DNA of 64,000 bases from Octopus sinensis (Eukaryota), in the NCBI RefSeq assembly GCF_006345805.1, contig NW_021837039.1, positions 1 to 64,000 on the forward strand, read 5' to 3'. Of this stretch, positions 35,101 to 58,747 are shown piece after piece; the stretch's first letter is position 1, and every line of letters begins with the position of its first letter. The position numbers and the translations under genes were made by a program. Below the pieces are notes generated by a model. That model searched no databases. It was not told the DNA's origin and saw only the letters and a program-made list of their open reading frames with translations.

Positions 35101-35901
35101 TTCCAGAAATCCCTTGCTTGGCAGTGCTATCGAGATGCACTACCTGTTCGAGAGAAGGGCTACAGGCACGGTTCGAAAACCATCACCGGACCGACCTGCC
35201 CGAGATGCGGTCATAGCGACGAAACCGTTCTGCACGCACTCGTGCAGTGTCCAAGTATTTCAGAGCTGTGGACCTTCGTCGAACAGCTGTTGTCACGTGT
35301 AGGTCGGGCCCGCCTATCGGCCGAGTCTATCGTGAATATTGTTCCACCACCTTCCTTTAAACGGGAAGGGAAAACGGTTTTCGTTACGCTGAGCTATGGC
35401 GAAAGAATGTGTGTGGTGGACGCGTTGAAAGGACTGCAAACAAACACCTTCCTCTCTGGTCAGTCTCTCGTCAACCTTTTCAAGTACCACTTGAAAAGGA
35501 GGATGAGAATCGAGGGGAAGGCTTTGTCGAACGAATGTTTTAATAAAAAGTGGGTAAAAGTGTCAAAAATGGTCAGTATGAAAGACGACACTATTTTAAG
35601 CATAAATCTGTAACCAAAAGAAACAACGAGAAGTAAGGCGACTTACTCATGTGTTCATTTTCGAACTGTCTGAGGTGACCTTGGTCTTTTTTGTAGGTTT
35701 TTCTTTCCAAGGCTACACCTAAACCGTGAACTTTATATATATATATATTGCTTTTTTATACACCACACAACCCACAGATCCCTATTGATGAAACGTTTTT
35801 TTTTTGTGCCCCACCCATTCCACCTCGAAAATAAAAAATTCTACATTGTATTTCGTCCATTTTTTATTCTGTGTTTAGCCCTGTGTGGCTACAGTAAAAA
35901 G
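32135..35901 (+). mobile_element. Tx1 copy B (subfamily 2), both termini intact, ~1.9-kb internal deletion
   Basis: Same 5' terminus. ORF1 joins post-endonuclease ORF2 at 33307/33308 (agc microhomology). RT ORF 33682-34320 has YADD; ORF 34681-35613 has CCHC. Flanked by (TCTA)n. Confidence 0.92.
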
Positions 35902-35949
35902 TTATCTATCTATCTATCTATCTATATTCTATCTATCTATCTATTTATC

Positions 35950-36076: not shown

Positions 36077-36077
<1 letters not shown>

Positions 36078-39073: not shown

Positions 39074-39314
39074 ATAAAGGGCGGCGAGCTGGCAGAAACG
39101 TTAGCACACCGGGCGAAATGCGTAGCCGTATTTCGTCTGCCGTTACGTTCTGAGTTCAAATTACGCCGAGGTCGACTTTGCCTTTCATCCTTTCGGGGTC
39201 GATAAATTAAGCACCAGCTACGCACTGGAGTTGATGTAATCGACTCAATCCGTTTGTCTGTCCTTGTTTGTCCCCTCTGTGTTTAGCCCCTTGTGGGTAG
39301 TAAAGAAATAGATC
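39074..39314 (+). mobile_element. SINE family 1 with Tx1-like tail and 12-bp TSD
   Basis: tRNA-like head ggcggcgagctggcagaa..gttctgagttcaaatt. Tail tttgtcccctctgtgtttagccccttgtgggtagtaaagaaa. TSD ttacg(a/g)cagcct at 39062-39073 and 39315-39326. Confidence 0.93.
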
Positions 39315-39558
39315 TTACGGCAGCCTGCTCGCTTTGTTGTCTGTCAGCCCCCGACTTCTTTTAATGGTCTATGACCTTTGGAAACAACTTACAGAGGTGA
39401 GACAAGAGGCATAGAGGGCGATAATTATTTAAAACCTTCTTCATCACTCTTCTTATGAAGCAGCGGGTTATTTGATTCTTTCCTCAGTGAAGGTATTTTA
39501 CAATCTGTCATGTAGTAATTAAAACGTAGAAGGAGAATTTTCCACAGCACTTCACCAC

Positions 39559-39823
39559 GGTACTATTTAAGAAGAGTGGTCCCGGTGCGGGCCCTCGAGT
39601 ACTCGCACATCCGCGCTAGCTAGTCGTGACTAGTCGATCCTACGATTACCTAGCAAAGTAATTAAAATACAAAATAAATATTTTTTTACACAGAGTAAAT
39701 AATTGTTTTATAGAAAGTAAATAAAGTACAAAAACACAAAGTAAGGATCGACTAGTCACGACTAGCTAACGCGGATGCGCAAGTACGCGAGCGCGCGCAC
39801 CGGGACCACTCTTCTTAAATACC
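39559..39823. mobile_element. Palindromic MITE-like element, copy 2
   Basis: Perfect 24-bp inverted repeat tatttaagaagagtggtcccggtg. Same family as 37740. Inserted in the RTE coding sequence. Confidence 0.87.
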
Positions 39824-40609
39824 CTTCATCTCTGCATCTGTCGTAGTGCCACCTTCCACTTCCAATTTGTCTGTTTCCATCAGTTTGAGGGCATTTTGAA
39901 TTTCACTGATTATAATACCTCGGAGCTCTTCAAGCGTTTCTAGTGGTGTTGGGTAGAGCTTCGCTGATAATTTAAAAGGCATTGTGTAGATGTTTTTGCA
40001 TATAAACGCTTCACAGAAGACTGCTGTTTTTGTTCGCTGACTCTCAGCAATGAGAGAAAGCATAATCATTTTACATACATACATAGAGAGAAGCTTGTTT
40101 GAATGAGTTCCCTTTGAAAAACGTCGTAAGTGATGGACCCTTGATGAAATTGCAGCGACTAGGATACATAATTGCATACAGAATAATGTGCAGCCGCTGC
40201 AGTAGAAACATGCTGGTCATTATTATATATTCTGAAGAAAACATTTTTTAATAAAAGGTTTTGGATTTGAATAAATCTCCACTCTCGTCTTCATTTTCAA
40301 TATATATATTATATATATTATATATATATATATATATTATATATATATATATATATATGTATAATTATATATATATATTTATATATATATATTTATATAT
40401 ATATATAATAATAAAAATTGGGAATTTTACCAATAGAACTGCAACTCCTATTTCAGATAACCTTATTGTATGGATACACATAGAAAGTTATATCCAATAA
40501 AGTAATATAAGCATTAAAAAAAACTACTATAAAATGCAATAAAATTACTTGAAAAAATACATATCACTTACCTGTTATAAGTCTGTGGAGAAAGAAGATA
40601 TTTTTAATC

Positions 40610-40682
40610 AACGCTACACGTGTTTCTCCGCTGGTGGGTTGTTTATCAACAACCTAAATCCACCAGTGCGTGCTCAGGCTAT
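40610..40682 (-). ncRNA. Decayed minimal type-I hammerhead-like motif
   Basis: Minus strand: atagc-CTGAGCA-cgca-ctggtgg..(ggttgtt/aacaacc hairpin)..ccaccag-cgga-GAAA-c-acgt-g-TA-gcgtt. Palindromic ACGT loop and GUA triplet. The core is one substitution off and stem I is imperfect. Confidence 0.45.
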
Positions 40683-41689
40683 TTATCTTATTGTTATTAT
40701 TACTAACGGATCAAAGTTAAAAATACATATTATAAGTCATATTCAATAAAGAAATAAGAATATGAATAAAAATATAATAAAAATATATAAATTACAAATA
40801 TATTAAAAGAAAATTTTTTAATTTAAAAAAATTTAAACAATTGAACACCTAAAATTACATTACCGATGTATATATAGAAAATGCTAAACCTTAGAAAACC
40901 CTCAACGACTATATTAGAAACACACCAAATCCTACAACCTATCTATATAAACATTACGGGAATTAATAATTTAGTGTAAAATTTACCCCAATCTATACAA
41001 GTATTAATTTCCATTTTTAATGTCAAACGTGAGTTAATAGTATTTAAAAAGATTATTTAGTATAAAATACTATATACGTTATAAATTTATTGAATAAAAC
41101 TAGTAAAAAATCTAGTAAAAATTAATAAAGGAAGAATACTTATCGACATAATTTTTACTCCTTGTTCCTGTGCAAATGGCGGCTCCCTCTGTCATGCGCT
41201 AAGTATTATGGATATAAGATAAATAAAATAAAATTTTCTGAAAAATTCTCTAAGACTAATAATATTAGAGAGGTTGACTCCAAGGGGAGATAATAACTAG
41301 ACACTCTTAAATCTAGCTGTAACTAGATATTTAAAATAGTGTTTAGGATTTAGAGTTTTATGTTAGATTAAATGTGGCCTGTCTATTCCTTTTAAGGTAA
41401 TATTGTTTAATAAATTCTTGGTTCCTGGTATATCCGTATCTAATCCTACTATAAAATTCTATTATAACTACATTTAACTATCTTCCTCATAATTGTTTAA
41501 GAGATTACATACTGGGTGGATGGGGAGTTACAATTTATTCACCGTCTAAACTATGCAAAAATGAAAATAATACATTTCATTTTAACAGATATATTTACCA
41601 AAATTACGTAAAAATGTCTTGAAATACTAAAGAATAAGTTTATTCAATAAAATTGCTTGTTTAAGTTGGTGAATGATACTATATTCCTT

Positions 41690-42706
41690 GCCTTCAGTTC
41701 TGTGCCCCACACATAATAATGAATGAGGTTGCAGTCTGGGGAGTTAGGTGGACAGATGTTAGGGGTGATGTGGTCTCAGAAATTGTCTGACAGCCATGAC
41801 TCGCTTCCCCTGCTTGTGTGCCATGGGGCAGAGTCCTGCTGCCAGACATAGGATCTTCCAGTAGCCACCCCCTTGATGCAGGGCAGCACTACTTCCGCCA
41901 GGCACTTGATGTAGGCCTCCGTGTTGAGTGTGAGGCCATGTGGGAAGATGAACGGAGGCATATTCATTTACATACAAACTAGTGATCACTCCAAACACCA
42001 TGATGTTGACTGGATGTTTGATTTTTATCACTCCCAGTGCATGTTTTTGGATACAATAAGCCAACGGTTTTTTCTGTATTTACCATCTGATCCTGGCAGA
42101 CATTTTTCTCGTTTGAGAAAACCAAAGCATGTTCGGTAGGAGAGCTTGTTTGAGCTTGTTCAAAAGTTTGTAGCGCAGTCTTTCCTCTTGTCCTTGATGG
42201 CTTGGGGTTAAAAGCTGACCCTTTCTCATCTTGTATGAGGAATACCAAATGTTTTCATGCTCTACCTGCCTGATAAAAATCTCAGACACTCCTATATATC
42301 TGGCGATGGATTTGATTACTTGATCGTTGTCAATCATGGCTTGGGTCTCACCAACAAATTCAGGAGTTCTTTTCTTATCAGAATAATCAGAGTGAATTTT
42401 CCGAACTGTCGTACCATCGTAATCACCATTAGACTCATCCAACTCCTTCTGAATCCTCTGCACTGTCCTCAGATTGGCACCAAATACTTTCAATTATTCG
42501 TATTAGAGATTCCGGCGCAGATGCCAAGCATTACAGCATGTTGTTCCAAAATTTCTGGCAGAGTGAACTGCGTCATGGTGCTGTATTTCTCACAGACGGT
42601 GTCCAATTGATCCGACTATACTGTGTAGTCGACAAAATCAAAAACAGACAACGTACATGCGCGAATAAAAAATTACAAAATGGCGATTTACCTATCGCAC
42701 CCAATA
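41690..42706 (-). mobile_element. Tc1/mariner transposase relic, DD37D (maT-like) spacing
   Basis: FSNEKNVCQD (D1 decayed), WQQDSAP, NSPDCNLIHYYVWG. 37 residues separate D2 from the expected third-D position (now H). One TIR-like end at ~42706 followed by (TA)n. Confidence 0.85.
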
Positions 42707-43637
42707 TATATATATATATTATATATATATATATATATATATGTACATACGTACATATATACACAGATTCATACATTCATACATATATATACATACATAC
42801 ATAGACGCACAATATATATATATATATCAAAAGATGTGTGTATATATATTAGTTTGTAGTTACACCTGTACAAAAAAAAATTTTATGCAAACACCAGAAG
42901 TAACTGCACCGTTCTTTATCTATAGTCAATACTTATATACATACATCTTACTCAGTTTAACCTAATATTCGAAACCCGGCCACTTAAATTTCTGAATATC
43001 ATCTATATCTGAGCTGTATTTCTATACGAATCTAGTTTCCCCTCACCTCTGTTGCATATACGTTGGAATGAACCCTGACTAGAAAATCAAGCTATTTCTT
43101 TTTATACTATAAACATCAAACGTAATATGCTGTGTGAGGAAAGCAGCTAAACCGAAAATTCTACGTCATTGTCAACCTTTCCCTTCTGAAAATAATATGC
43201 GTTTGTATTTGCAGGTAGTATTAAGAATAAACTAATGTAAGGAAAATGTAAATAGTACTCAACAGAATAAATTTTTATTACATTATATCTAATGTAACAC
43301 TACCTTAACAAATATAATTTGATATTTTGTGAAGTCGTTGTTATTATCAGATTGCTTTTTGAAAAGTGTTAGCGCTTTAAATGTATTTTACTCTTTATCT
43401 GGTATCTCGATCAAATAGCGTAAATATTTGTGGCATTATGAGGTAATGAATGAACAGACCACTTTCCTTGTGATAATTAGTAATCTATCTACAAATATCC
43501 AAAACAATATGCTGCCTTCGACTGGTACAGTTAGCAACACGTGTAATCCAATATAATAAAACACCAGAGTATGGGTTGTTTTTTTAATATTGTTTCTTGT
43601 TCGTAACATTCGAATAAAATTGAACGTTAAAGAGAGA

Positions 43638-43674
<37 letters not shown>

Positions 43675-46253
43675 AGCGAGAAGGGGAAGCGGAAGGTGCG
43701 AGTATTATAAAAAAAATAGTGAGGGATTGAATGTGCGCTAAGAGTAAGCTTGGCAGATCGAGAATGAGATTTAGAATTGAGAATTATACTAAGACAAGCA
43801 ATATGTACGACGCTAAACTATGTGGTGTAGGCTGGAAGTTTCGACAGCATTTGCTTTTATAATAGAGCATAGGTTGCAATTAAAGATCATGTACACATTT
43901 TACTGTAATATAACAGTTGTAGTAAACAGCAATATTTACATTACAGAAAAACTATACAGCTTGCAGTGTGTAATATTACATTACATTTTATAACATGATA
44001 CTACTGCATTTTACAGGGTTATTCAAAACATTTCATAAAAATATAGAGTATCCGTTTACACCAACGTTTACATTTTACACCATTTTACGGAATGCAGTTT
44101 ACAAGAACGATATTATTTCACAATATATTACAGGTAGTCGTTTACAAATATTTACAATATGTATGTATATATTATGGCAGAGATGGAAGCCAAATATTTA
44201 CTACCTTCTCTAATAGGATATAGTTACAGAACGGCGTATACAACCTCTTACTCTATCAACAAATATTAAATGCGCATTAAATCTAAAGTTCTCTACCAGC
44301 AACATTTTTTACATCTATTTTAGAGGGAAAAGAAACAATTTGTCAGTCTGTTTTGTTAATTAGTTATCACAGGTTTCCACTGTTCTTATTTCTACTAAAG
44401 AACACATTCAATATTTTTTTTTGACAAATATATTTCAGATCTAACATATGTGTCGAGATCTGTTATTTTCGCAACAATGGGAAGAATACTATGGAACTGC
44501 TTTATCTTCAATATAAAGGGTTGAGTTATATGACTTGGAACTATATTCACTGTAGGCATCAATACTCTGTCTCCTCTTCTGCTGTCACTCTTAATTTCTG
44601 GAATGCATTGATGCAATGAATTCCTGAAGGTCTAGAGTCTTTCAGTAGGCTATTCCTGGTTACAGGTTGACATGAACATTATAAGAGAAAAAGCATTTAG
44701 TATTTGCTCACGAGAAGGTAATCCCAAAAGATAAGCTGATTCAAATCATCTTAAAAATAATTTACTTCCGGGTGCAATAGAATGGTATTCGTACTCATAT
44801 TTTCTAAGAATATAAGAATATAAAAGGGCATTTGGTAATTCATCTGTTAACATCGGAGTTGCATTTACTGTTTTGTATTGAAGAATTTCTAAGCGAAATT
44901 GCAAAGATGATAAAGATGTAACTAGGATGGGTACAGGAAGACTGAGTTTACTGTGAATTGTTATCACTCGTCAACAAATAAACAGAAATGTCAGTTGTTG
45001 CAGAGGACCACACGTTCTTACTATGAACGTTTTGTAAATCTATTGTTTTATTGAACTTTTATAAGCATTATGGAAACGCCCTTCACTATCGCCAACGAAT
45101 ATTTTCAGAAACTCGTTCAAAGCATATAAGTTGAGGTCATTTAAACTTTGTGGTGGTGTTAAATTGCATCATTCTCCACGTAAAAATCTTTATTGACATC
45201 ATTAAAAGTTGTTATACATCCAGACAGTCCTCTGTTACTGCAGTGCATGAAGTCAATTACGCTAATAAATTACGCAAAATACATTTTAGCGAACTTCCCT
45301 GTATGTTCCTACCATCTGCTAAGAAATCTTAAATAAATCCTTACTCAAGCCATTGGAATAAGGACAGAGGACCAAGCTGTCCAGTTAGAAGTTATCTAAC
45401 GATCCAAAATTCTTTTAGTTGATGACACAATCTGTTTTTCTTTACAGCTTCCGATATATATCGTACCATTATATTGTTATCATTATTTAGAAAATTTTTC
45501 TTGCAGCTGATGCTTTTATAAGTGTTATGAATAACGTTGTCACGAGCAGGAGCTCTCTTCAAGTATGTAATAATGATAACAATGCCAACAACAACAACAA
45601 CAACGATGACGACGACGAGAGCAACAACAACAACAATCTTAAATATAATCTCTCAATTTTCTGCAGATGAACAGCATGCATTCTTGTGATTATTTTATCT
45701 CCTCAATTATTTTCTGTTTTCATGCTGTTGTCCTTTTGTTACAGTCACAATAACAGAGAATTTTAGAGTAGGCATACCCTCTGGCAGCTTCTTAATTTTC
45801 CATTTTAGTCTAAAATATACCGTAAATAATTGTTTCTATGTAAGGCATTTTTTAAAGAAAGGCTCTATTTCAGGTGTATTCTGGGAAGTAAATTGGATGA
45901 TCATGGTTCGAAATGTATTGGAACTACGTAATGAAAGTGTAGGAAGAACCATGCACTCAGTATACCATCAACCTCCACCTTATTTCTGTGAGCGTTGACG
46001 TATTAGCTATTTATGTATTGAGTAATTCCATCATAAATAAATACATTACGTTCTTGTATTTCTACGTCTGTACAATTATATTTGCAATAATTGTCCTTGG
46101 AAATATATTTCACAGAGATAAGGAGTAAATTCTAGAGTTGATGTGTCGTTGTTGCACATTACTTATTTGTTGCCTGGTACATTTCAGTTGTCAATTTGAT
46201 AATTACCTGTTTACAGCAAACTTCAGAAGAGAGAATAAGACAGGGAGATAGTG

Positions 46254-46303
<50 letters not shown>

Positions 46304-47455
46304 GGAGAGAGAGAGAAAGAGAGGGAGAGAGAGAAAGATGGATAGTATTTCTTTATCTTGTAGCTTTTGTAGCATCTCTGAGGTCTTTAGAAAACTATTT
46401 GGAATATTTATTGTTTGCCATAGAGGGTTCATTGGTTTGACGTATAGAATATTGTAAACAGTTAACTCTATGATAGGATCTGGAAGCACTGCACACAAAA
46501 GTTCCGCAGTTCATGTGAGATCATTGAAAGCAACTTTGTCTTGTAATATGATGATAAAATAAGAGTGAAATATTCCACATTTTGAAATACAATAGGACAA
46601 GGAGAACTTATCCAATGGAATTTACCGTGCGTAAACCACAATATGCCAGGAGAGTTATTAACAGGAAAGTGCGAATTAATGTTTCTCTTTTCTCAATCTC
46701 CAATGAAATCCGATCTTTATTTTCGAGCATGATGACAGTAATGGACATGTTTCGGATTTGTTAGACCTCATTAGTGATGATAAGCATCACAGTACTATTA
46801 TCCATATTACAGTCTTCGTTAAAAAAGGTTTCTTTTAAGACATTTCTCTCGCTCTCTACCTCTTTCTCTCTCTCTCTCTCTTTCTCTTCCTCTCTGATCA
46901 CCCCTCACCCACAGAGACATATATGGAGAAAATAAGCGAAATACTTTATTTCAAGTTCAAAACATCAGAAACCGCAGCTGCAAGTTTTATGGAACTGGTC
47001 GCCAGATAAGAGTGAATTTATGAAGAAGTACAATGGTTTTACATGGTACCGTGTGAATCAGTAGAGAAATCATCAAATAAACTTTGAAAACTGATTGTAG
47101 AAGAGTTTGTTCACATTTCAAAACTGATAGAATCTTTTGGAGAAATCGATTGATCATTGAAAAATAATGTAACACAAACATGAATAACGAGTGTATTTAG
47201 TTGAATAAAACGAAGTATTATGCCTTGAAGAAAGAAAATATTTATATATTTTCTGCCGTCAAGAAAAAAATCCAGGTGAAAAAGCCATTTTAGAACTTAA
47301 GAAACATACACAAAATGGTTTGATAATAACATTAAAAACCAAACAAGAACAAATTCATAGCTGTAAAATAAAATTTGTTGTAATGGACGGGTGCAGAGAG
47401 TAAAAAGGAGTGAAAGTGAGTTTTGTATAAAATAAAGTGAGGCGAGGTAGTGAAG

Positions 47456-47543
<88 letters not shown>

Positions 47544-48590
47544 ACAGAGAAGAGAAAGAGAGAAGGAGGGAAAGAGAGAGAGAGAGAGAGAGGTTTGTTA
47601 AAGAAGTATGGAATGAATAAAATGCTTGAATAGCGAATGGGTACAAACGTAGGTGCATCGATACTTAATTTCAGTCTGAACAATATGAATGGAGTCATAC
47701 ATACATACATATATACATACATACATAGATACATACATGCACACACAAACTCATGCACACATGCACACACACACACACAAGCACGTACATTATTTGTACG
47801 ATTAAGAATACTACAGAAAGTTTTCAAGAAAAGCGTTTGCCTCTTTTTTTTTTCTTAAGTGTTGGAAGCAATTGGTAAAATGCCCCTAGATTTTGCGTCC
47901 AACACATTAATTGAACTACACGAATAATTATATGGATAACATCTCTTACATTATATTCTCTCTTCCCCAAACCGTCACCACCTCCTTTATTTAGCCTTCT
48001 TTTATCCTGTTAGATAAGCTGTTACCGTTCTCTTATAAATTTCTCCCTCCCAACCCAACGACAACCAAGATACATACACAAGGTACATACACAACCCCAC
48101 CTCACCCTCTCTGCAAAAACCCTTCGTACCATTCTTCGATTTAATTTACCGCTTCGTTACCGAATATATACCTAAAAGAGAACACTTCTAAGTATTATCA
48201 CTTTCTCTCTCCTTCCGAAAAAGGACAAGTATCTGAAACGTCAATTTATTATCTTCTTTACAACATAAAAAGATATTCCACTGATCTATTAGTATTGCTT
48301 TTACTGAAGCAGAATATAACAATTTCATCAGAATCTAATAAATGTATCTTCATCTATGTTTATATGTATTCAGTGTGTATATGTGTGTGTATGTGTCAAG
48401 TGTGTGATTGTACAGGCACATGTGGGTATGCTAGATTTTAATCAACTTCAACGAAAGTAAATTTTATTGATATTCCAGAAATGATCTTTTTCAGCTGTTA
48501 CATTAATTCTTTCATTATCTTTGTCTTTCCATCTCGCATACACAAACACTAACACACACAGTCACATACACAAGCATGCACACACGTACA

Positions 48591-48621
<31 letters not shown>

Positions 48622-48744
48622 TCATATTCGTGTGTATGTGCTCATATTCGTGTGTATGTGCGTGTGTTCATGTTTGTGTGTGCGTGCGGTGTAGCAAGAA
48701 TATTTACCAGTCGGTATCTTTAACCCTCCATATATTAATATCTC

Positions 48745-48799
48745 GTTATCTATCCATCTATCTATCTATCTATCTGTCTATCTAACTATCTATCTATCC

Positions 48800-48867
<68 letters not shown>

Positions 48868-48896
48868 GTCTATCTAACTATCTATCTATCCATCTG

Positions 48897-48947
<51 letters not shown>

Positions 48948-48956
48948 GTCTGTCTA

Positions 48957-48997
<41 letters not shown>

Positions 48998-49010
48998 GTG
49001 TCTGTCTATC
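48745..49010. repeat. (TCTA)n/(TCTG)n array with no Tx1 terminus attached
   Basis: Direct reading. The flanks do not match either Tx1 end. Confidence 0.93.
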
Positions 49011-49262
49011 AATCAATTAATCAACTGGCTGTTGTCGCGACGTCACCCGTAAGTTTAAAGAGTTTCTGCTTTATTAATTTGTAAACAATTTTTGTCAATA
49101 AATTCTCCCTTTAAGTATTTAAGGGAGAATTTTCGGGTTTCAAAAAACTATTTAAAAAAATGAATAGCTTGTTCCGAGACCAGCAGCGTCTCTCTAACCC
49201 ATTTGGACGTTGACATTTCTCCGTTACCAACAGCAACGAGTAAGATAGAAAGCATTCCCTCA

Positions 49263-49338
<76 letters not shown>

Positions 49339-49539
49339 CACAGTTGAACAACGACACTAGCGTTCCTACCGAACAAATGGGAAGAGAAAGGAAACACAAT
49401 GACTGTTGCTACCACCACTGCCTCCACCACCGCCTCTACCACTTAGACCACTTAGACCCGGTGGGTAGGCTGGTCTTCTTGGATGTCGATGGCAGTAATG
49501 GGTGTGCTCTCCGACTGGTAACGGTATATACACTGTCCT

Positions 49540-49945
49540 GAAGGTGGCGAGCTGGCAGAAACGTTAGCACGCCGGGCGAAATGCTTAACGGTATTTCGTC
49601 TGCCGAGGATGAAAGCCGAGGTCGACTTTGCCTTTCATCCTTTCGGGGTCGATAAATTAAGTACCAGTTAAGCACTGGGGTCGAAATAATCGACTTAATA
49701 CCTATGTCTGTCCATGTTTGTCCCCTCTATGTTTAGCACCTTGTGGGTAATAAAGAAATAGGTATTTCGTCTGCCGTTACGTTCTGAGTTCAAATTCCGC
49801 CGAGGTCGACTTTGCCTTTCATCCTCTCGGGGTCGATAAATTAAGTACCAGTTACGCACTGGCGTCGATGTAATCGACTTGATCCGTTTGTCTGTCTTTG
49901 TTTGTCCCTCCTGTGTGTAGCCCATTGTGGGTAGTAAAGAAACAG
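49540..49945 (+). mobile_element. Dimeric SINE family 1 (Tx1-like tails) with decayed 16-bp TSD
   Basis: TSD gtatatacactgtcct (49524-49539) vs gtatgtgcaccgtcct (49946-49961), 13/16 identical. Internal restart at 49763. Confidence 0.88.
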
Positions 49946-50358
49946 GTATGTGCACCGTCCTTATCAGATCAGGCGGATTTCCTTCGACGTCTAGAGGTTT
50001 TCATGGAAACGTCTCGAGCTATCTTGGACACGCGTCTAGACTATGTAGGTATAGATAGGAAGAGAAAGGGATAGAAAAATGCCTCAAAGACATGCTCAGC
50101 TGTTTCCACTCGATTGTGCCAATGTGGACATGAACCAACCGCATTGAGTCGTCCAGATCGTATTTAGATAGAGTATTCAGAAGGACAGTAGATAGGGATA
50201 ATGTAGGTTGTCCACAATTTCCCATAGTCCGTTACGCAGATCAAAAATTCGTGACCTGTACGCTCGATTTAGGTAAGGATCATAGGCAGGGTCCCGGATA
50301 CTCGAAATTGAACGCATTGCTCCTGCTCAACAAGTTTACAAAGACGTATTAAAGCATT

Positions 50359-50920
50359 AGAAGAGAAAAAGAAGAAGAAGAAGAAGAAGAAGAGAGAAGA
50401 AGAGAGAAGAAGAAGAAGAGAAGAAGAAGAAGAAAGAAGAAGAAGAGAAGAAGGAAGAAGGACAAAAGAGAAGAAGAAGAAGAAGAAGAAAAGACGAAGA
50501 AGAAGAAGAAGAGAAGAAGAAGAAGAAGAAGAAGAAGAAGAAGAAGAAGAAGCGAAGAAGAAGAAGAAGAAGAAGAAGAAGAAGAAGAAGAAGAGAAGAG
50601 AAGAAGGAAGAAGAAGGAGAGAAGCTTCGTGGGAATATGTGGATTTGACGAGCGGTCCCCAACAATCCCGCATGTAAAGACATCCTGTTTGCCACAGATT
50701 GTCCACAGACGCAGGGGCAGAACGACCGAGGAGCCGCCGGTTGCCAAAACAGACACTCCGAGGATTTTCTCCGGGTTGTGGCCCTAATACCACTCGGTGT
50801 CCGACCAATCCGCCTTGGGTGGCTCTGCCAGGAACCGAAGTTCCCGACGGCATAGCTCTGACACTACCCGTTGCCAGCGTCCCCACCACGGTGAGGAGGG
50901 GATGGACTTTGGGGACGCAC
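50359..50920. mobile_element. (GAA)n tract plus ~290-bp GC-rich insert inside Tx1 copy E
   Basis: The Tx1 sequence resumes at ~50921 (gcattag / gcactag junction repeat). The insert recalls Expander/Rex3-type RTE 5' regions, from memory only. Confidence 0.45.
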
Positions 50921-51265
50921 TAGTTAAGAGGGAGTTGACGGGAGACATTGTCAACAACGATTGGTTGTTTTCCCAATAGAGGGCAATTAAAGCAGAATCG
51001 CTTAGTTATAGCAAGGCTTTAGCGATAGAGCGAAATAAAATAGAGGGAGAAATATCCATGACAACCATCACCTCAAGGTAGTTAAGGAACATGGCATGGT
51101 ATGTGTCGACCATAGATACTTGACGGCTGTCCTTAAGGCGACTGGTTTCGGTCCAGTCTTTCGCAGTTGGATCGCTGGTTTATACAGCGGCATCCGCTCA
51201 GTAGTTCGAGTAAATGGCCATCAACGTAGACCATTTACCGTCTCGTCACTACTGTATATATTGAC

Positions 51266-51385
<120 letters not shown>

Positions 51386-54300
51386 CGGACGTGCTGTCAC
51401 TTCGGCTCCGAAGGTAATCGTTTATTTTGACTATTTATAGCCCATATTTTGTGTACATTTTTTAAATAAGGTGTGTAAGGCACCCAACTTTCATTTGAGT
51501 GCTTTTCCAAGGGAGGAATTCGCCCCTAGCGGCATTTTCAACCCTATTTAATTTGCGTAATTTTCTTCTCGACATTAAAAAAATGTCGAGAAATTTTATT
51601 GTAGAACGCTGGTCGCGTTCTTTTATGGACCAGCATTTTCCTAGTCTGGAAACGCGAGGAGAAAAAAAGAACGTATGCACGCAAAGTGTAAACCTGAATG
51701 ACGTGGTAGTGAACGCTGCAACCACTTGCGGTAACAGCCCTGTCACCCCACCACTAACAACAACAACAACGAGACTACTACTGCTACCACCACCACCTCC
51801 ACCACACGACAACATAAAATGATAAAAATGAAACTCACGCGAATACTATTAAGAAAAAACAACAAAAACAACAATAACAATAAAAATGAACTATCTAATA
51901 GTGAAGATGTTATATAAAAATCAACAACACCAGTAAATTTCGCTGACACTCTGCGTCAGAAGAAGAAAAATAGTAAAATTTACAAATGAAGAGCTAATAG
52001 AAACGAGAGCTCTCTATACAACCCGTGGGCAAGATTTAGTGCTGCATACACCTCAACACATAAAGGAACAAATAGAAAATAAAACAATTATATATAAAAT
52101 TATAAGAAAAAACAAAAAACAAAATGAACAGATTACAAAAACGGATATAGAAAAATGTTTAAAAAATATAATGAAACAAAAGAATATATAAACTGGGGTC
52201 CCCAGTTTAACACAGTAGTGGTCCGCTTCCCTAACCAGGAAGTGGCAAAAGCTCACTCTACCAAGTCTTTGGAAAATGAGGATATCAAAATGGTACCTTA
52301 TTTCAAAGGCCAGAGAGTGAGTAGAATTACTATTAAAAATGTACCCCCCGAGATCCCGAACAAATGGATAACAGGGGCAATCTGTTACCATTTGAAAAAG
52401 ATCAATATTTTAGAAACCATCGTGTACCTAAACGACAATTGGGGTGGAAAAACAATAGTAGTGACCATCCAGATTGAGGGGGCCTCGATCGAGAACCTAC
52501 CCGATAGGATCCACTTAGAAAATGGGCAAAGCCTATATGTTGTGGCAGAAGGCAAAATGCCTAGATGCTACAACTGTGGCAGCCTAGAGCATTTAATTGC
52601 CAAGTGCGCTCTAGCACAGAAAAAAACAAGAAAGAACAAATCAGAAAACAAATAAAAAAAACCCGTTGCCAACACCAACACCAACACACTCAATTATGGA
52701 ACAATGCCAAGAAGAAAACCAACAATCCAGCAAACAAACCCCAAAACATCACCAAGAAAAGAAACAGTACCAACAAAATCACCGTTGACGACGCAACCAA
52801 TTCATCATGCTGAATCAAAAGATAGCACCACACCAACATCCAGGACGACAATTAAAAAGACAGAAAACAGTGACGAGAAGACAAATTCTACCCCTAACAC
52901 CACAACAACACAAACACCGCACAAAACATCAACAATTTCTACAAGCATACATATTAACGCAAATGCTTTGCCTTTACCCCCTTCTGATACGCCGGACGAC
53001 GAAAGTTCGACGGAATGGCAAATAGCCACAGGAGGTAAAAGTAAAAGATAAAAAAGCCCACCAAACAAGGAAGTAAAGCAGGGATATATTTAACTCCGGA
53101 CAGCATCCCCTAGACAATAAAAAAATCAATGAACCCGCAAAACCACACACACAACTAACTGCAATAGTCATAGACAATAAAATATTAATGGATTACATTG
53201 TATCCAACACGGACATCTGTGAAGATGACTTTAAGACAAACAATCATCCGCGCACCACACCACCGAAGCTCATAAAAATTGTACACATAACACAAACACA
53301 ACACCATACACTGAAAACAATATTTCCAAATGCGGTAGGCGGGTTTCAACGTTACCTCTCCAAAAAACTACACAAACACCTCATCAAAGACACTACAAAA
53401 GAAGAAGAAAAATATGAAACTTTCGAAATGAGTAAGTGACCTTCCCTCTTGCCTCTTGTCTCTTCCAATGTAGTGTGTGAAACACAATTTTCGTAAACGT
53501 CAATTATGCTTAAATTAGGTTGTGTGAACATGGGTGGTGGAGGTACCGCGGTGCTTTTTCGAAAGAGTCTAAATGTAAAAGTAAGAGCAATATTCCTAGA
53601 CCCGGAGGGTAGGCTGGTTGTCTTGGACGTGGATGGCAGAAATCGGTGTGCATTCCGTCTGATGACAGTTTATGCACCGTCCTTAACGGGTCGGGCGGAT
53701 TTCTTCAGACGGCTAGAGGTTTCCTGGTACGTCTAGACCTTTACTGTTAGTAGGGGATTGGAACGCTACCTTGGACGCATCTAGATTATGTGGGAAGGGA
53801 TAGGAATAGAAGGGGGTGTAAGAGCCTCAAAGACCTGCTCAGACGTTTCCATTGTCTGACAGGTTCCGACTCGACCATCCGAACGTGCCAACGTGGACTT
53901 GGACAAACCGCGTCGGATCGTCGAGATCTTATCTAGATAGAATTCTATGCAGGACAGCGGATAGGGATAGTGTAGGATGTCCACAATTTAAAATAGTCAG
54001 CTACACAAATCACAAATTTATGACGTGTTCGCTCAACTTAGATAAAACACATAGGCAGGATCCCGGTTACTGGAAACTGAACACGTCGCTCTTAGCGCGA
54101 CAGGTTTACAGGAACCGGATTAGCGAATTAATTAAGAGGGCACTGACGGGAGCCGTCGTTAACAACCGCTGGTGGTACGCCCTGAAAATGGCAATAAAAT
54201 CGGAATCAATTAGGTTTAGCAAAGAATTAGTGATAGATCGAAATAGAGTAGAGGGAGACCTGGTTACGAAACTAGAAGAGGCACTCACCACTGGCGGCGC

Positions 54301-54760
54301 AACCAACGTGCTAGATGCGAGGATGGCCCTCAACCAACACCTCAACGCCAAGCACGAAGGTTGCGTCGTCATAGCTAAAATGCGTGCCTTAAGGAACGAA
54401 GGGATCGAAGCTGCGCGAAGGGCCCGGGTAGCGGAAGTGCAGCGTGGCAACAGAGCCACCATTCGGTCTCTAATAGATCAACAGGGATGCAGTTTACTCG
54501 AACCCGAAAAGATGTGTGAGGCCTTTCAATAGCACTTTGCTCGACTGTTTGGTGCCAGTGGTGGGTCGGAACGCGGGATGGATTTTAGTGCCTACCTGAC
54601 CGACCTGCCACAGCTCTCGGCAAGAGAAGCGAAGTGTTGTGAAAGTCCCATCACAGTCGTTGACGTGCGGGAGGCGATGGCGGGCTGCGCGAGGGATAAG
54701 TCGCTGGATTGATGGTTTATCCTACGAGCTGTATTGTCAAATGCCAGACTCGTTTGGCGA
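51386..54760 (+). mobile_element. Tx1 copy D (subfamily 2): 5' end, ORF1, endonuclease; 3'-truncated
   Basis: 5' terminus follows (TCTA)n. ORF1 52155-52655 has CYNCGSLEHLIAKC (CX2CX4HX4C) and ends ..EMSK* at 53439. ORF2 ATG at 53506, with ~165 bp missing after CVN. Confidence 0.92.
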
Positions 54761-57535
54761 GCAGATTTCTTTCGACGTCTAGAGTCTTTCATGGGAACGC
54801 CTCGTCCTTTACTTTTAGTGGGGGATTGGAATGCCACCCTGGACATGGCATCTAGACTACGTGGGCAGAGATAGCAATAGAAGGGGATGCAAATGCCTCA
54901 AAGACCTGCTCAGACGTTTCCAACTGTCTGACAGGTACCGACTGGACCACCCGAATGTGCCAATGTGGACATGGAGTAACCGCATCGGGTCGTCCAGATC
55001 ATACTTAGATAGAGTATTCTGTAGGACAATAGATAAAAATAGTGTAGGTTGTCCACAATTTCATATAGTCAGTTACACAGATCACAAGTTTGTGACTTGT
55101 ACACTTGACTTAGATAAGACACATAGGCAGGGTCCTGGTTACTGGAAACTGAACGCGTCTTTTACAGCACGACAGGTTTACAGGGACCGGATCAGCACAT
55201 TAGTTAAGAGAGATTTGACGGGTACCATCATCATCAACAGATGGTAGTATACCCTAAAAAAAAAGCAATTAAAGCAGAATCAGTCAGATACAGTAAAGCC
55301 CTATCTTTAGACCGAAATAGAATAGAGGGAGAATTAGTTAAGGTTTTAGAAGGGGCACTTAGAACTGGCATCGCGTCCAACGTGCTGGCGGCGAGATTGG
55401 CCCTCGACCAACACCTCAACGCCAAACACGAATGATGCGTTGTCAGAGCTAGGATGCGTGCTCTGAGGAACGAAGGAGTTGGAGCCGCCCAAGAGGCACG
55501 AGTGGTGGAGACGCAACGAGGCAACAGAGCAACCATCATGGGGCGCGAATTGCTCGAGCCTAAAAGGATGTGTGGGGCTTTTCAAGAACACTTCACCCAA
55601 CTGTTTGGGACAAGTGGTGGGTCAGAACGCACAGTGGACTTTAGTGCCTACCTGCATGCCTTGTCACGACTCTCAGCAAGAGAGGTGGAGTCTTGTGAAA
55701 GCCTATCACAGCTGCGGACGTACAGGATGAGATGGAGGCTGCGCGAGAGACAAGTCACCAGGCTTGGATGTCTGCCCTACCAACGTTATTTGTCATATGC
55801 CAGACTTGTTTGGAGGCGTCTTGGCAGCTGTCTACTGCAACTGGCAGCAAAACGGGAGTATTCCTGCTTTTGTAAAGCGAGGAGCAGTGCACTGATTAAG
55901 AAAGACCCAAACAAGGGGACGTCATAGATCATTTCAGGCCCATCACTCTGCTCAACGCAGATTTGAAATTTGGCCAGGTGTTAGCCGAGGTTGCGCTTGT
56001 CATCAAGAACTATCGACAAGGCGCAAACATGCGCCGTGCCGGGTAGAAGTATTCATGACAACCTCCATCTGATGCGCTACATCATAGACAGGGTAGTTAG
56101 AATCCTGGCATGGGTGGGGCGCTGATCAATTGGATCAATCAAAAGCTTTCGATAGGGTAGACCATCACTACTTGGAGGCTGTCCTCAAAGCGGCTGGTTT
56201 CGGTCCAGTTTTCCGCGGTTGGATCGCTGCCTTATACAGCGTCATCCGCTCAGTAGTTCGCGTAAATGGTCATCTATCCAGACCTTTTAACATCATGCGT
56301 TCGGTTCGTCAGGGATGCCCTCTCTCATCGCTGCTGTATGTATTGACTCTTGAGCCACTACTGCGGAAACTGGCGACGCTGAGGGGCATCCCACGAGAGC
56401 TGGGATGCGGGAGGAGCGTGTCTGCATACGCGGATGACGCAACCGTCATAGTGTCGAGCTACCAGCACATCGAGCTGGTCGGCGAGACACTAAAAGAATA
56501 CGAAGCGGTAACGGGAGCAAAAATTAACCGGGAAAAGTCAATGGGCTTGCGGCTCGGCACCTGGAGAAGCAGGCCCATGCCGTCCAACTGCGTCTCCATC
56601 GTGGGACGCTGGACGGACGGACCGGTTAAATTGCTCGGGGTCTGGTTCGGTCCGGACCTCCAAATGGAGAAGAACTGGGGCGAGATAACGACTAGGGTGG
56701 CTACTCTCACCCAGAAATGGGCTGAGAGAAAGCTATCCCTAAAAGGTCGGGCGGAGGTGGCGAACGCGTACATCGCATCCGTCATCGAGTATCGTCTGAC
56801 CGTCGTGCCTTGTCCCGATCCTACCATCACCAAACTGGAACGTATACTCTTCCGCTTCCTGTGGAAGGGAAACGTTCCGATGGTTAGGCGATCCATTTGG
56901 TGTCAACACCCGCTAAATGGAGAGCTGGGCATGGCGTGGTTGATGACATGCGCTGAGACTGCGACATCTCCGGCGCTTCATAGACGACGGTGAACAGGTG
57001 TGGTCGCCTTTTGTGCGGTGCGCTTTCCCGCAGCTCGTCTCCTTGGGCGAACTACAGTCATGGATCAAGCAGAGACCGAGTCTAGGCGAATGGCACCGCG
57101 AGTGTCGTGTTGCTCTCAAGCATCTCTGCCGTCCGGGATCGAACTTGTGCGACTCCACCACAACAAAGGCATTCTATATATATGTTGCAAAGATGGTGCG
57201 TGCGAGTGACGAAACCATTTTGAGCATGACCCTGTAAATCGTAAAAAAGAAAGAGAGAGAGCATTTTGCTCTCATGTGGTTATTTCCTCCCTGACTGAGG
57301 TTCCCGTGGTCTTTTTTGTAGGCTTTTCTTCCCATGGATGAACCCAATCTTGTTTTATCAATGTTTTTATCAATGTTTCTGTGATACACGATTTCTCCCC
57401 CCCCCCTTTTTTTCCTCTCGATCCCTTTTGATCGCAATCTTACATTTATATCCTTTTTTCCACCATCGAAAAGAAAAGCTCTACATTTGTATTTGTCCCC
57501 TCTGTATTCAGCCCTGTGTGGCTAATAAAAGAAAG
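54761..57535 (+). mobile_element. Tx1 copy F (subfamily 1-like), fused to D; ~570-bp deletion near the 3' end
   Basis: Restarts inside the endonuclease (gcagatttctttcgacgtc). RT ORF 56130-56993 has YADD. The CCHC region is deleted at ~57180. The 3' terminus is followed by (TCTA)n. Confidence 0.92.
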
Positions 57536-57570
57536 TTATCTATCTATCTATTTATCTCACTACCTATGTT

Positions 57571-57647
<77 letters not shown>

Positions 57648-58379: not shown

Positions 58380-58747
58380 TATTTCTTTACTACCCACAAG
58401 GGGCTAAACATAGAGGGGAGAAACAAGGACAGACAAAGGAATTGAGTTGATTTCATCGAACCCAGTGCGTAACTGGTACTTAATTTATTGACCCCGAAAG
58501 GATGAAAGGCACAGTCGACGTCGGCGGAATTTGAACTCAGAACGCAGCGGCAGACGTAATACCTATTTCTTTACTACCGACAAAGGGCTAAACCTAGAGG
58601 GGACAAATAAGGACTGACAAAGGAATTGAGTTGATTATATCGACTCCAGCGCGTAACTCGGCGGAATTTGAACTCGGAACGTAATGACAGACGAAATACG
58701 GCTACGCATTTCGCCCAGCGTGCTAACGGTTCTGCCAACTCGCCGCC
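58380..58747 (-). mobile_element. Dimeric SINE family 1 (Tx1-like tails) with 19-bp TSD
   Basis: TSD ttttaggcagaaaggtata at 58361-58379 and 58748-58766. Same internal restart as 49540. Confidence 0.93.

What the first reader, a model, noticed from the sequence alone, without database searches (positions are those of the whole stretch)
39262..57535. SINE 3' tail matches the Tx1 3' terminus: a candidate Tx1-dependent SINE that ignores the LINE's target
SINE tail tttgtcccctctgtgtttagccccttgtgggtagtaaa(gaaa) vs Tx1 copy F end tttgtcccctctgtattcagccctgtgtggctaataaa(agaaa): 32/38 identical. Copy B shares tctgtgtttagccc exactly. Both can form a small terminal stem-loop (agcc/ggct; gccc/gggt). Shared 3' tails are the established signature of SINE-LINE partnership, mostly with L2/CR1/RTE partners. 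The three SINE insertions here (39074, 49540, 58380) have 12-19-bp TSDs at non-TCTA sites, so either trans-mobilisation relaxes specificity or a non-specific Tx1 relative is the driver.
Basis: partly seen in the sequence, partly recalled or inferred. Interest (0 to 1): 0.8.

Follow-up and report, generated by a model that had tools for sequence, protein, structure and literature searches.

The report
Octopod SINE carrying a Tx1-like LINE tail
A short parasitic repeat (SINE) in this octopus-type genome ends in the same ~45-base module as a family of L1/Tx1-like LINEs, so it very probably borrows that family's machinery to copy itself; this is an ordinary kind of SINE-LINE partnership with an unusual LINE clade, and the LINE copies next to it are not shown to be the actual driver.

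Summary
The SINE's last ~45 nt occur five times in the window. They match the 3' termini of the LINE copies that sit in (TCTA)n arrays: 32/38 as reported, 36/43 when extended to LINE F. Local-alignment scores are 18-28 against a null maximum of 15.

The LINE is an L1-group element. It has RVT_1 and zf-RVT domains, relatives carry an APE domain, and the best solved-structure match is human L1 ORF2p. It inserts precisely into (TCTA)n. Tx1-clade placement is likely but was not tested phylogenetically.

The three SINE insertions have 12-19 bp TSDs at non-TCTA sites. Two of them are dimers.

New evidence comes from a second octopod, Argonauta hians. It has the same SINE family and the same LINE family, and there the tails agree 36/38. 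The LINE and SINE copies seen there are dispersed, not in TCTA arrays. The window SINE tail matches an A. hians LINE tail (35-36/42) as well as it matches the window's own LINEs.

So "SINE with a Tx1-family tail" is well supported. "Ignores the LINE's target" is more likely explained by an unsampled dispersed LINE subfamily than by relaxed trans-mobilisation. The hairpin is positionally conserved but thermodynamically unremarkable.

Precedent: SINEU/Tx1-Mar (Kojima 2015).

The parts
39080..39311 (+). SINE monomer. It has a tRNA-like head, a conserved core and a LINE-like tail. It is preceded by 6 extra nt (39074-39079). TSD TTACGNCAGCCT at 39062-39073 and 39315-39326.
39263..39311 (+). LINE-derived 3' module of the SINE: ...TTTGTCCCCTCTGTGTTTAGCCCCTTGTGGGTAGTAAAGAAATAG.
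49543..49945 (+). SINE dimer inserted inside LINE fragment D/E. Unit 1 is 49543-49761. Unit 2 is 49762-49945 and is 5'-truncated, starting at monomer position ~59. TSD at 49524-49539 and 49946-49961.
58380..58747 (-). SINE dimer with the same internal junction. Unit 1 is 58747-58563 and has an internal deletion. Unit 2 is 58562-58380. Perfect 19-bp TSD at 58766-58748 and 58379-58361.
25674..31933 (+). LINE copy A, full length (~6.2 kb) but with a degenerate ORF2. It lies between (TCTA)n arrays 25571-25673 and 31934-32132. Its tail is 31886-31933.
32135..35902 (+). LINE copy B, with internal deletions. Its tail at 35856-35902 contains TCTGTGTTTAGCCC. It is followed by the (TATC)n array 35903-36077.
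36077..37168 (+). LINE copy C, a 3' fragment. Its tail is cut after ...GCAGCCCT. It is followed by the (TATC)n array 37169-37494.
49453..51237 (+). LINE fragment D/E. It is truncated at both the 5' and 3' ends and carries the SINE dimer. It is followed by the (TCTA)30 array 51266-51385.
51386..57536 (+). LINE copy F, a composite. F1 (51386-54757) and F2 (54758-57536) overlap over ~1.06 kb of ORF2 at 75% identity. The tail at 57492-57536 is the one quoted in the finding. It is followed by the (TATC)n array 57537-57652.

Best explanation
What it is. This is a dispersed, non-autonomous retroposon (SINE) family of octopods. Each unit has three parts:
- a tRNA-like head (box A-like TGGCAGAAACG, box B-like GAGTTCAAATTCC);
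- a conserved core (GGTCGACTTTGCCTTTCATCCTTTCGGGGTCGATAAATTAAGTACCAG);
- a ~45-nt 3' module that is homologous to, and was taken from, the 3' terminus of an octopod L1-group, Tx1-like LINE family.

Inferred mechanism. The SINE is transcribed from its internal promoter. The LINE family's ORF2 protein (APE endonuclease + reverse transcriptase + C-terminal zinc-binding domain) binds the shared 3' module, a short hairpin followed by UA(A/G)UAAAGAAA. It then copies the SINE RNA into a staggered nick by target-primed reverse transcription, leaving 12-19 bp duplications.

Which LINE drives it. The LINE copies visible in this window are a subfamily that inserts precisely into (TCTA)n arrays. The SINE most likely uses a sister subfamily of the same LINE family that inserts at dispersed AT-rich sites, as seen in Argonauta hians, rather than these array-bound copies.

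Shown versus inferred. Shown: the homology, its terminal position, the TSDs, the LINE domain content and array specificity, and conservation of the pairing in a second species. Inferred: the direction of capture, recognition by ORF2p, and the identity of the driver.
For: (1) Tail match. It is far above chance and terminal in both elements.

(2) The module belongs to the LINE. It is contiguous with the 3'UTR in every relative whose 3' end was recovered:
- window copies A, B, F;
- A. hians LINE_1 and LINE_2 (L002);
- A. hians LINE_3, directly downstream of ORF2 (L113);
- a metagenomic octopod LINE (L003).

(3) The tail is the swappable SINE part. Sibling SINE copies with the same head and core carry other tails (18847-19050, 20043-20258, 4671-4480).

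(4) Second species. A. hians has the same SINE architecture. Its SINE tail consensus matches a local LINE tail 36/38, as similar as SINE copies are to each other. About 28 SINE-related hits occur in 35 kb, at dispersed sites. 10 of 12 intact tails, and LINE_2, end in AAATCTAT.

(5) LINE class.
- Window copies have RVT_1 + zf-RVT.
- Relatives have Exo_endo_phos + RVT_1.
- The ORF1 region has a weak CCHC knuckle.
- The best solved-structure match is human LINE-1 ORF2p, 174 bits versus 88 for R2.
- All three 5' ends (CGGACGTG...) and all four 3' ends abut (TCTA)n/(TATC)n.
- All ORF2 fragments in the window lie in the two array clusters.
- Octopus genomes are reported to hold recently active L1-Tx1 families (PMC13282606).

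(6) Hairpin. A 3-4 bp helix sits at the same place in every lineage, with one G-C to C-G swap (LINEs and A. hians SINE GGCC/AGCC...GGCU versus window SINE GCCC...GGGU) and an A-U / G.U / G-C series at the outer pair.

(7) Timing. A SINE dimer sits inside a LINE fragment, so the SINE was active after that LINE insertion.

(8) Mechanism precedent. Shared 3' tails as the handle for trans-mobilisation: Kajikawa & Okada 2002 and Hayashi et al. 2014 (PMC4176376); surveys in PMC3472496 and PMC3747384.
Against: - No intact, same-species LINE with a tail >=90% identical to the window SINE was recovered. The best are 84% (window F) and 83-86% (A. hians LINE_3).
- The last 3-6 nt differ between the window SINE (AAATAG) and the window LINEs (AAACA/AAAGT + TATC repeats).
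- The hairpin is not thermodynamically better than shuffled sequence (z -0.3 to -0.8; only LINE F reaches -2.2). Covariation rests on about five lineages.
- ARAGORN and Rfam do not call the head a tRNA.
- All LINE copies in the window are degenerate, so contemporaneous activity is not shown here.
- Other LINE clades of the genome (RTE, CR1, Dong-R4) could not be screened for a better tail match.
- Tx1-clade placement was not tested phylogenetically.
Confidence: 0.75

Rival explanations
1. The (TCTA)n-specific LINE subfamily seen in the window is itself the driver. When it acts in trans on SINE RNA, target specificity is lost. The reason would be that array choice depends largely on annealing of the LINE RNA's 3' (UAUC)n extension to the nicked array, and the SINE RNA lacks that extension.
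For: - LINE F gives the highest score against the G-variant of the SINE consensus (28) and the longest gap-free match (36/43; it shares TTTGTCCCCTCTGT exactly). Against the A-variant, A. hians LINE_3 scores higher (29 versus 26).
- SINE and LINE copies are interleaved in the same region.
- SINE TSDs start with T-rich/TAT-like sequence (^TATACC, ^GTATAT, ^TTACG), faintly like the LINE's ^TATC junction.
- In crocodilians, two of the three SINEU families show only weak retention of the Tx1-Mar target (PMC4494074).
Against: - In target-specific APE LINEs the endonuclease is the main determinant of the site (Takahashi & Fujiwara 2002, as cited in PMC4494074). A total loss of specificity (0 of 3 insertions in arrays) is therefore unexpected.
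- An A. hians LINE tail matches the window SINE equally well (35-36/42).
- Loop sequence and terminal nucleotides differ from the window LINEs.
- In A. hians, the LINE copy that matches the SINE is itself outside arrays.
Confidence: 0.2
2. The tail is a relic. It was captured from a Tx1-like LINE in an octopod ancestor, but the SINE copies seen here were mobilised by another LINE clade, or by relaxed recognition, and the similarity no longer has a function.
For: - Window SINE versus window LINE identity is only 74-84%.
- The SINE family with this tail predates the Argonauta/window-species split.
- The hairpin energy is unremarkable.
Against: - In A. hians the SINE and LINE tails are 95% identical although the lineages are old. 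That argues for continued co-evolution or re-capture, i.e. ongoing selection for the match.
- Within the window, the five SINE tails conserve the module about as well as the rest of the SINE.
Confidence: 0.12
3. The similarity is not due to capture by the SINE. Either the LINE 3' ends picked up a SINE fragment, or the match reflects low-complexity or poly(A)-signal-like sequence.
For: The shared segment ends in an A-rich AATAAAGAAA stretch.
Against: - The complex part (GTCCCCTCTGTGTTTAGCCC...GTGG) carries most of the score.
- No SINE core or head sequence is present in any LINE 3'UTR.
- The module is present in every LINE subfamily whose 3' end was recovered, in three sources.
- Control windows never exceed score 15.
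Confidence: 0.03

Closest known systems
Stringent-type SINE/LINE pairs with a shared 3' tail (e.g. eel UnaSINE1/UnaL2; tortoise SINE/CR1; zebrafish ZfL2 stem-loop recognition)
   Same: - The SINE's last tens of nucleotides are homologous to the partner LINE's 3' end.
- A short hairpin lies near the end.
- TSD-flanked, dispersed SINE copies.
- Tails are exchanged between SINE subfamilies that keep the same head and core.
   Different: - The known pairs are overwhelmingly CR1, L2 and RTE. A survey of 58 pairs found only three with L1-clade tails, and no mollusc appears in its table (PMC3472496, PMC3747384).
- Here the LINE is an L1-group, Tx1-like element.
- Trans-mobilisation is not demonstrated here.
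SINEU mobilised by Tx1-Mar in crocodilians (Kojima 2015, PMC4494074)
   Same: A SINE whose proposed driver is a target-specific Tx1-clade LINE. Some SINE families keep only a weak version of the LINE's target preference.
   Different: - SINEU was linked to Tx1-Mar by a shared target (Mariner-N4_AMi) and shared snRNA-derived 5' ends. It has a poly(A) tail, and no LINE with its 3' sequence is reported in the passages read.
- Here the link is a shared 3' tail, the head is tRNA-like, and no target is shared.
Microsatellite-specific Tx1-clade LINEs: Kibi (TC)n, Koshi (TTC)n, crocodilian Tx1 in (TTCC)n/(TTTC)n (Kojima & Fujiwara 2004 as cited in PMC4494074)
   Same: An APE-type LINE of the L1/Tx1 group, inserted precisely and repeatedly into one microsatellite, giving head-to-tail clusters separated by the repeat.
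   Different: - The repeat here is (TCTA)n and the host is an octopod.
- Sister copies elsewhere end in (ATT)n or at dispersed sites.
- Clade membership was not tested phylogenetically.
Monocot L1 lineage with a conserved structured 3' end shared with maize/sorghum SINEs (ZmSINE2/3; Ohshima 2012, PMC3472496)
   Same: An L1-group LINE that appears to use stringent 3'-end recognition and shares its last ~45 nt with SINEs.
   Different: That case is a plant L1 lineage, not target-specific, with a more stable predicted structure.

Membership tests
SINE/LINE pair sharing a 3' tail (stringent type) | The SINE 3' end is homologous to the LINE 3' end, and the match is terminal in both. | tested here: met
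   32/38 to 36/43 identity. Scores are 18-28 against a null maximum of 15. blastn E = 2e-6. In A. hians the match is 36/38.
SINE/LINE pair sharing a 3' tail (stringent type) | The SINE has a small-RNA-derived head with a pol III internal promoter. | tested here: inconclusive
   ARAGORN found 0 genes and Rfam gave no hit at E<=1. By eye there are a box A-like TGGCAGAAACG and a box B-like GAGTTCAAATTCC. The A. hians head has a canonical GTTCGAATCCC.
SINE/LINE pair sharing a 3' tail (stringent type) | SINE copies are dispersed and flanked by target-site duplications. | tested here: met
   There are three independent insertions with TSDs of 12 bp (11/12), 16 bp (13/16) and 19 bp (19/19).
SINE/LINE pair sharing a 3' tail (stringent type) | The tail contains a conserved RNA structure. 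| tested here: inconclusive
   A 3-4 bp helix lies at the same place in all lineages, with one compensatory G-C/C-G swap. RNAalifold gives no consensus on the MAFFT alignment. Energy z-scores are -0.3 to -2.2.
SINE/LINE pair sharing a 3' tail (stringent type) | SINE and LINE were active over overlapping periods. | tested here: inconclusive
   SINE units are 84-92% identical to the 39k copy. LINE copies are 75-94% identical to each other and all are degenerate. One SINE lies inside a LINE fragment.
SINE/LINE pair sharing a 3' tail (stringent type) | The LINE protein mobilises the SINE in trans through the tail. | not testable with these tools
   This needs a retrotransposition assay.
Tx1 clade of non-LTR retrotransposons (L1 group) | ORF2 with an APE endonuclease, a reverse transcriptase and a C-terminal Cys/His zinc-binding domain. 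| tested here: met
   Window copies have RVT_1 + zf-RVT. Relatives P0022 and P0028 have Exo_endo_phos + RVT_1. Their N-terminal APE region aligns to window copy A by tblastn at 28149-28727. The APE ORF of window copy A is itself too decayed for Pfam.
Tx1 clade of non-LTR retrotransposons (L1 group) | The RT domain groups with L1/Tx1 rather than with other LINE groups. | tested here: met
   The best solved-structure match is human LINE-1 ORF2p (E 3e-50, 174 bits), against R2 at 88 bits.
Tx1 clade of non-LTR retrotransposons (L1 group) | Phylogenetic placement of the RT inside the Tx1 clade rather than L1 proper (RTclass1-type test). | not tested
   No named Tx1 or L1 reference set was available in the tools. 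The only support is that octopus L1-like LINEs are classed as L1-Tx1 in the literature (PMC13282606, PMC8967140).
Tx1 clade of non-LTR retrotransposons (L1 group) | Target-specific insertion. | tested here: met
   All three intact 5' ends (25674, 32135, 51386) and all four 3' ends abut (TCTA)n/(TATC)n. No ORF2 fragment lies outside the two array clusters.
SINEU / Tx1-Mar type partnership (shared target) | The SINE inserts preferentially into the partner LINE's target. | tested here: not met
   None of the 3 window SINE insertions lies in a (TCTA)n array, although the window holds seven arrays. The A. hians SINE copies are also dispersed.
SINEU / Tx1-Mar type partnership (shared target) | snRNA-derived head. 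| tested here: not met
   Rfam gives no U1/U2 hit on the SINE. The head has tRNA-type boxes.
Deu / Nin-DC core SINE superfamily | The central domain is homologous to the Deu/Nin-DC consensus. | not tested
   The core ...TTTCATCCTTTCGGGGTCGATAAATTAAGTACCAG resembles the Deu domain from memory only. No reference sequence was available. Octopus SINEs are reported as mainly tRNA-Core and tRNA-Deu (PMC8967140).

The most novel reading that the evidence does not exclude
The array-bound (TCTA)n-specific Tx1-like LINE is the real driver. Its SINE passenger shows that, for this clade, microsatellite targeting is imposed mainly by annealing of the LINE RNA's 3' repeat extension to the nick, not by the endonuclease. 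On this reading an RNA lacking the repeats is integrated at dispersed AT-rich sites. That would be a natural experiment separating template recognition from target choice in a site-specific LINE. It would also be a route by which a 'safe-haven' LINE fuels a genome-wide SINE expansion in octopuses.
Probability: 0.2. Interest if true: 0.75.

Novelty: new member of a known kind. Interest (0 to 1): 0.45.

Why it matters
SINEs are reported to be the main components of the Octopus repeat content (about 40% of TE content and 11.6% of the O. vulgaris genome: PMC8967140, PMC13282606). Nearly all recently active SINE families there are 'unclassified', with no named LINE partner. Tying one widespread octopod SINE family to the L1-Tx1 LINEs through a shared 3' module does three things:
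- It names a candidate engine for part of that expansion.
- It adds an animal L1-group example to the short list of L1-clade LINEs with stringent 3'-end recognition.
- It offers a tractable pair (in A. hians the tails are 95% identical) for testing how a target-specific LINE family and its SINEs divide template recognition from site choice.

It is an incremental finding, not a new principle.

Tried and rejected
- Metagenome scans. A protein-pattern scan of JGI metagenome contigs for LINE relatives matched 105 pattern stretches, but none was confirmed. A DNA-pattern scan for the tail found 0 hits. The octopod-containing samples are evidently not in that collection.
- Bacterial/archaeal genomes. 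A degenerate tail pattern gave 105 hits, all chance. No SINE or LINE similarity was found by blastn.
- Contig look-ups for more LINE tails. P0001/L001, P0003/L004, P0007/L006, P0121/L114, P0126/L115 and P0130/L116 all end before the tail. L005 has a divergent end. P0005 is not on record. P0009/L112 is from a non-octopod genome with no SINE.
- RNAalifold on the MAFFT tail alignment gave no consensus structure, because the 5' arm is in different registers in different lineages. I did not build a covariance model, since only about five independent lineages are available.
- (ATT)n-ended SINE subfamily versus the (ATT)n-ended LINE tail of L003. The score is 13, at about the 99th percentile of the null, which is not significant. 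I kept it only as a lead.
- tRNA identity of the head. ARAGORN and Rfam were negative.
- Naming the species. No hit was close enough. I can say only that it is an octopod, because the best protein relatives are from Argonauta hians and other cephalopods and the SINE family is shared with A. hians.
- Chance or low-complexity similarity was rejected.
- LINE capture of a SINE fragment was rejected. The module is present in all recovered LINE 3' ends, and no SINE core occurs in any LINE.


Full report

Yes. The quoted SINE tail occurs at 39267-39304 (exact), 49717-49754 (3 mismatches) and 58386-58423 on the minus strand (2 mismatches). None is expected by chance. The quoted LINE tail is at 57492-57529, and TCTGTGTTTAGCCC is exact in LINE copy B at 35868.

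A blastn of the whole 39-kb SINE copy against the window finds its last ~40 nt at the ends of LINE A (E 8e-5) and LINE F (E 2e-6). With a simple local-alignment score, the last 57 nt of the SINE score 23, 21, 18 and 28 against the last 64 nt of LINE copies A, B, C and F. The best of 20,000 control 60-mers from the same window scores 15. The 32/38 figure is reproduced. Against a SINE consensus the match to LINE F extends to 36/43. The similarity is at the extreme 3' end of both elements (alignment A1).

**2. Anatomy of the SINE copies**

There are three independent insertions, all outside (TCTA)n:
- 39080-39311 is a monomer. It has 6 extra nt at its 5' junction and a TSD of TTACGaCAGCCT / TTACGgCAGCCT.
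- 49543-49945 lies inside a LINE fragment. Its TSD is GTATATACACTGTCCT / GTATGTGCACCGTCCT. The insertion is independently shown by a 14-bp duplication of LINE coordinates.
- 58747-58380 on the minus strand has a perfect 19-bp TSD, TATACCTTTCTGCCTAAAA.

Each is a full unit followed by a unit truncated at monomer position ~59, and both share the junction GAAATAG|GTATT(T/A)CGTCTGCC. Because they share one junction but have independent TSDs, a dimeric master was amplified.

The head has box A- and box B-like motifs, but neither ARAGORN nor Rfam calls it a tRNA.

Older relatives with the same head and core carry different tails. They lie at 18847-19050 and 20043-20258 (both ending in long (ATT)n), at 4671-4480, and as a fragment at 62023-62091. 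The tail is therefore the exchangeable module of this SINE group.

**3. The LINE**

Self-comparison and tblastn place all LINE material in two clusters, 25.6-37.2 kb and 49.4-57.5 kb:
- Copy A (25674-31933) is full length but frameshifted.
- Copy B (32135-35902) and copy C (36077-37168) follow it head to tail.
- D/E (49453-51237) and the composite F (51386-57536) form the second cluster.

Every intact 5' end begins CGGACGTG... immediately after (TCTA)n. Every 3' end runs ...AAAGAAA(CA/GT) into (TATC)n. Copy A has unique DNA upstream of its 5' array, so the array pre-existed. This is precise, repeated insertion into one microsatellite.

Domain content and affinities:
- Pfam finds RVT_1 and zf-RVT in the window copies.
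- Relatives have Exo_endo_phos + RVT_1, and the ORF1 region has a weak CCHC knuckle.
- The best solved-structure match of an intact relative (P0001) is human LINE-1 ORF2p, 174 bits against 88 for R2.
- The closest proteins in the public collection come from Argonauta hians, other cephalopods, and unnamed metagenome or run assemblies.

So the element is an L1-group, APE-type, target-specific LINE of an octopod. Target-specific members of the L1 group are what the literature calls Tx1 (PMC4494074, PMC3747384). Octopus genomes are reported to contain recently active L1-Tx1 families (PMC13282606). I could not run the RT phylogeny that would formally separate Tx1 from L1.

**4. Evidence from elsewhere that changes the picture**

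Two A. hians loci (L002, L113; 35 kb) contain about 28 matches to a SINE of the same architecture. The core is recognisably the same, and the tail is ...TTCTGTGTTCGGCCCTTGTGGCTAATAGAGAAATCTAT.

Three LINE 3' ends were also recovered there:
- One lies directly after the P0004 ORF: ...TTTCTGTGTCAGCCAGGTGGCTAAGAAAGAAATTTAAT.
- One is a 3'UTR-only copy: ...TTCTGTGTCGGCCCTTGTGGCTAATAAAGAAATCTAT|TTTTAAAA.
- One lies directly after the P0123 ORF...GTCCCCTCTATGTTTTTGCCCTTGTGGCTAATAAAAGAAATA(ATT)4.

A metagenomic octopod relative (L003) ends ...GGGCCCTTGTGGCCAATAAAAGAAATC(ATT)n. The module is thus an ancestral feature of this LINE family's 3' end, whatever follows it.

In A. hians the SINE consensus and the second LINE tail agree at 36/38. 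That is as high as SINE copies agree with each other, and both end in AAATCTAT. None of the three LINE tails there lies in a TCTA array, and the SINE copies are dispersed. Their flanks mostly begin with T and are AT-rich. One clean TSD (CTATTTCAAGGAA, 13/13) includes the terminal CTAT, which indicates microhomology at the priming site.

The window SINE consensus matches the third A. hians LINE tail (35-36/42) as well as it matches window LINE F (36/43). Its loop (CTTGT) is the one found in the A. hians and L003 LINEs, not the CTGTGT of the window LINEs. Its last bases (AAATAG) also differ from those of the window LINEs.

**5. The hairpin**

RNAfold places a 3-4 bp helix at the same position in every lineage:
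- Window LINEs: AGCC/GGCU, loop CUGUGU.
- A. hians LINE_1: AGCC/GGCU, loop AGGU.
- A. hians LINE_2 and SINEs: GGCC/GGCU.
- L003: GGCC/GGCC.
- Window SINE: GCCC/GGGU.

The second pair is G-C everywhere except the window SINE, where it is C-G. That is a two-sided compensatory change. The outer pair runs through A-U, G.U and G-C. An outer extension (UCU...AGA, UGU...AUA) is possible in several sequences.

Individually, however, the folds are no better than shuffled sequence (z -0.3 to -0.8; only LINE F reaches -2.2, 3/200). RNAalifold finds nothing on the unadjusted alignment. The stem-loop is plausible and positionally conserved, but it is not established.

**6. How it most likely works**

The SINE carries the 3' recognition module of this LINE family and is reverse-transcribed in trans by the family's ORF2p at staggered nicks. 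This is the standard stringent-type mechanism (Kajikawa & Okada 2002; PMC4176376; surveys PMC3472496, PMC3747384).

I favour a dispersed sister subfamily as the driver, for four reasons:
- In A. hians the LINE copy whose tail matches the SINE is itself dispersed.
- The window LINEs are not a uniquely good match.
- The terminal nucleotides disagree.
- In target-specific APE LINEs the endonuclease is the main determinant of the site.

The alternative is that the array LINE is the driver and that specificity is lost because the SINE RNA lacks the (UAUC)n extension. This is not excluded. LINE F gives the longest gap-free match and the top score against the G-variant of the SINE consensus, although A. 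hians LINE_3 scores higher against the A-variant. SINEU families also retain the Tx1-Mar target to very different degrees (PMC4494074). With only three insertions in the window, no site logo can be drawn.

**7. Comparison with what is known, and novelty**

SINE/LINE tail sharing is textbook. A Tx1-clade driver for a SINE has been proposed once, for crocodilian SINEU, on the basis of shared target and shared 5' ends rather than a shared tail (PMC4494074). L1-clade LINEs with SINE partners sharing a structured tail are rare: three of 58 pairs, with no mollusc in the survey table (PMC3472496, PMC3747384). Kojima's 2018 systematic SINE-LINE comparison (PMC5786205) does not mention Tx1.

In the searchable literature I found no description of an octopod tRNA-type SINE with a Tx1-like tail. 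I cannot check Repbase or Dfam annotations, where this may already be noted. I therefore rate it a new member of a known kind, of moderate interest. Its main value is in naming a candidate engine for part of the octopus SINE expansion and in providing a good pair for experiments.

**8. Limits**

- The species was not identified.
- No intact same-species LINE with its tail was recovered, because all contig look-ups that reached a relative from other samples ended before the tail.
- Other LINE clades of the genome were not screened.
- Age overlap was not measured.
- Clade placement is by inference.

Noticed in passing
window 18847-19050 (+), 20043-20258 (+), 4671-4480 (-): These are older SINE relatives with the same head and core but other tails. 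Two end in long (ATT)n, and the 20-kb copy has (ATT)n on both sides. Sister LINE tails ending in (ATT)n exist (L003; A. hians L113:11150-11210). The direct tail comparison (score 13, about the 99th percentile of the null) is not significant. A Dong-R4 type (TAA)n LINE is an alternative partner.
   Followed up: partly
window 49543-49945 (+) and 58747-58380 (-); L002 10824-11316: The two window SINE insertions are dimers with an identical internal junction (GAAATAG|GTATT...; the second unit starts at monomer position ~59) but independent TSDs. This implies an amplified dimeric master. A. hians also shows head-to-tail SINE copies. The SINE 3' end may itself be a favoured insertion site.
   Followed up: partly
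window 51386-57536 (junction 54757/54758); also 33305-33626 in copy B: LINE F is a composite of two subfamily copies overlapping over ~1.06 kb of ORF2 at 75% identity. Copy B shows a related junction. Possible causes are template switching, recombination between tandem copies, or nested insertion. F2 also lacks the last ~200 codons of ORF2.
   Followed up: no
window 62023-62133 (-): This is a SINE head/core fragment in which the box-B region (CCTTACGTTTTGAGTTTGAATT) is triplicated in tandem (TRF period 22).
   Followed up: no
protein P0005: A protein annotated in NCBI as 'MAG: zinc-binding domain-containing protein [Herbaspirillum sp.]' is 58% identical to the C-terminal part of this octopod LINE ORF2. 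This is probably host (cephalopod) DNA binned into a bacterial MAG.
   Followed up: no
L113 5165-5203 and 5322-5360: In A. hians, two identical tail-only units (TGAAAACTTGTTTGTCTGCTTCTGTGTTCGGCCCTTGTGGCTAATAGAGAAATCTAT) lie 157 bp apart. Many further hits cover only the last ~40 nt of the SINE. They are either extreme 5' truncations or other short elements that use the same tail.
   Followed up: no
window 1-1386, 2204-2519, 5084-5449, 21053-24392 and others: The window is unusually rich in long microsatellites: (TG/TA)n-type blocks, (AT)n, (ATT)n, (GAT)n, (AGA)n and seven (TCTA)n arrays. One array (48747-49014) grades into (TCTG)n and has no adjacent LINE tail.
   Followed up: no
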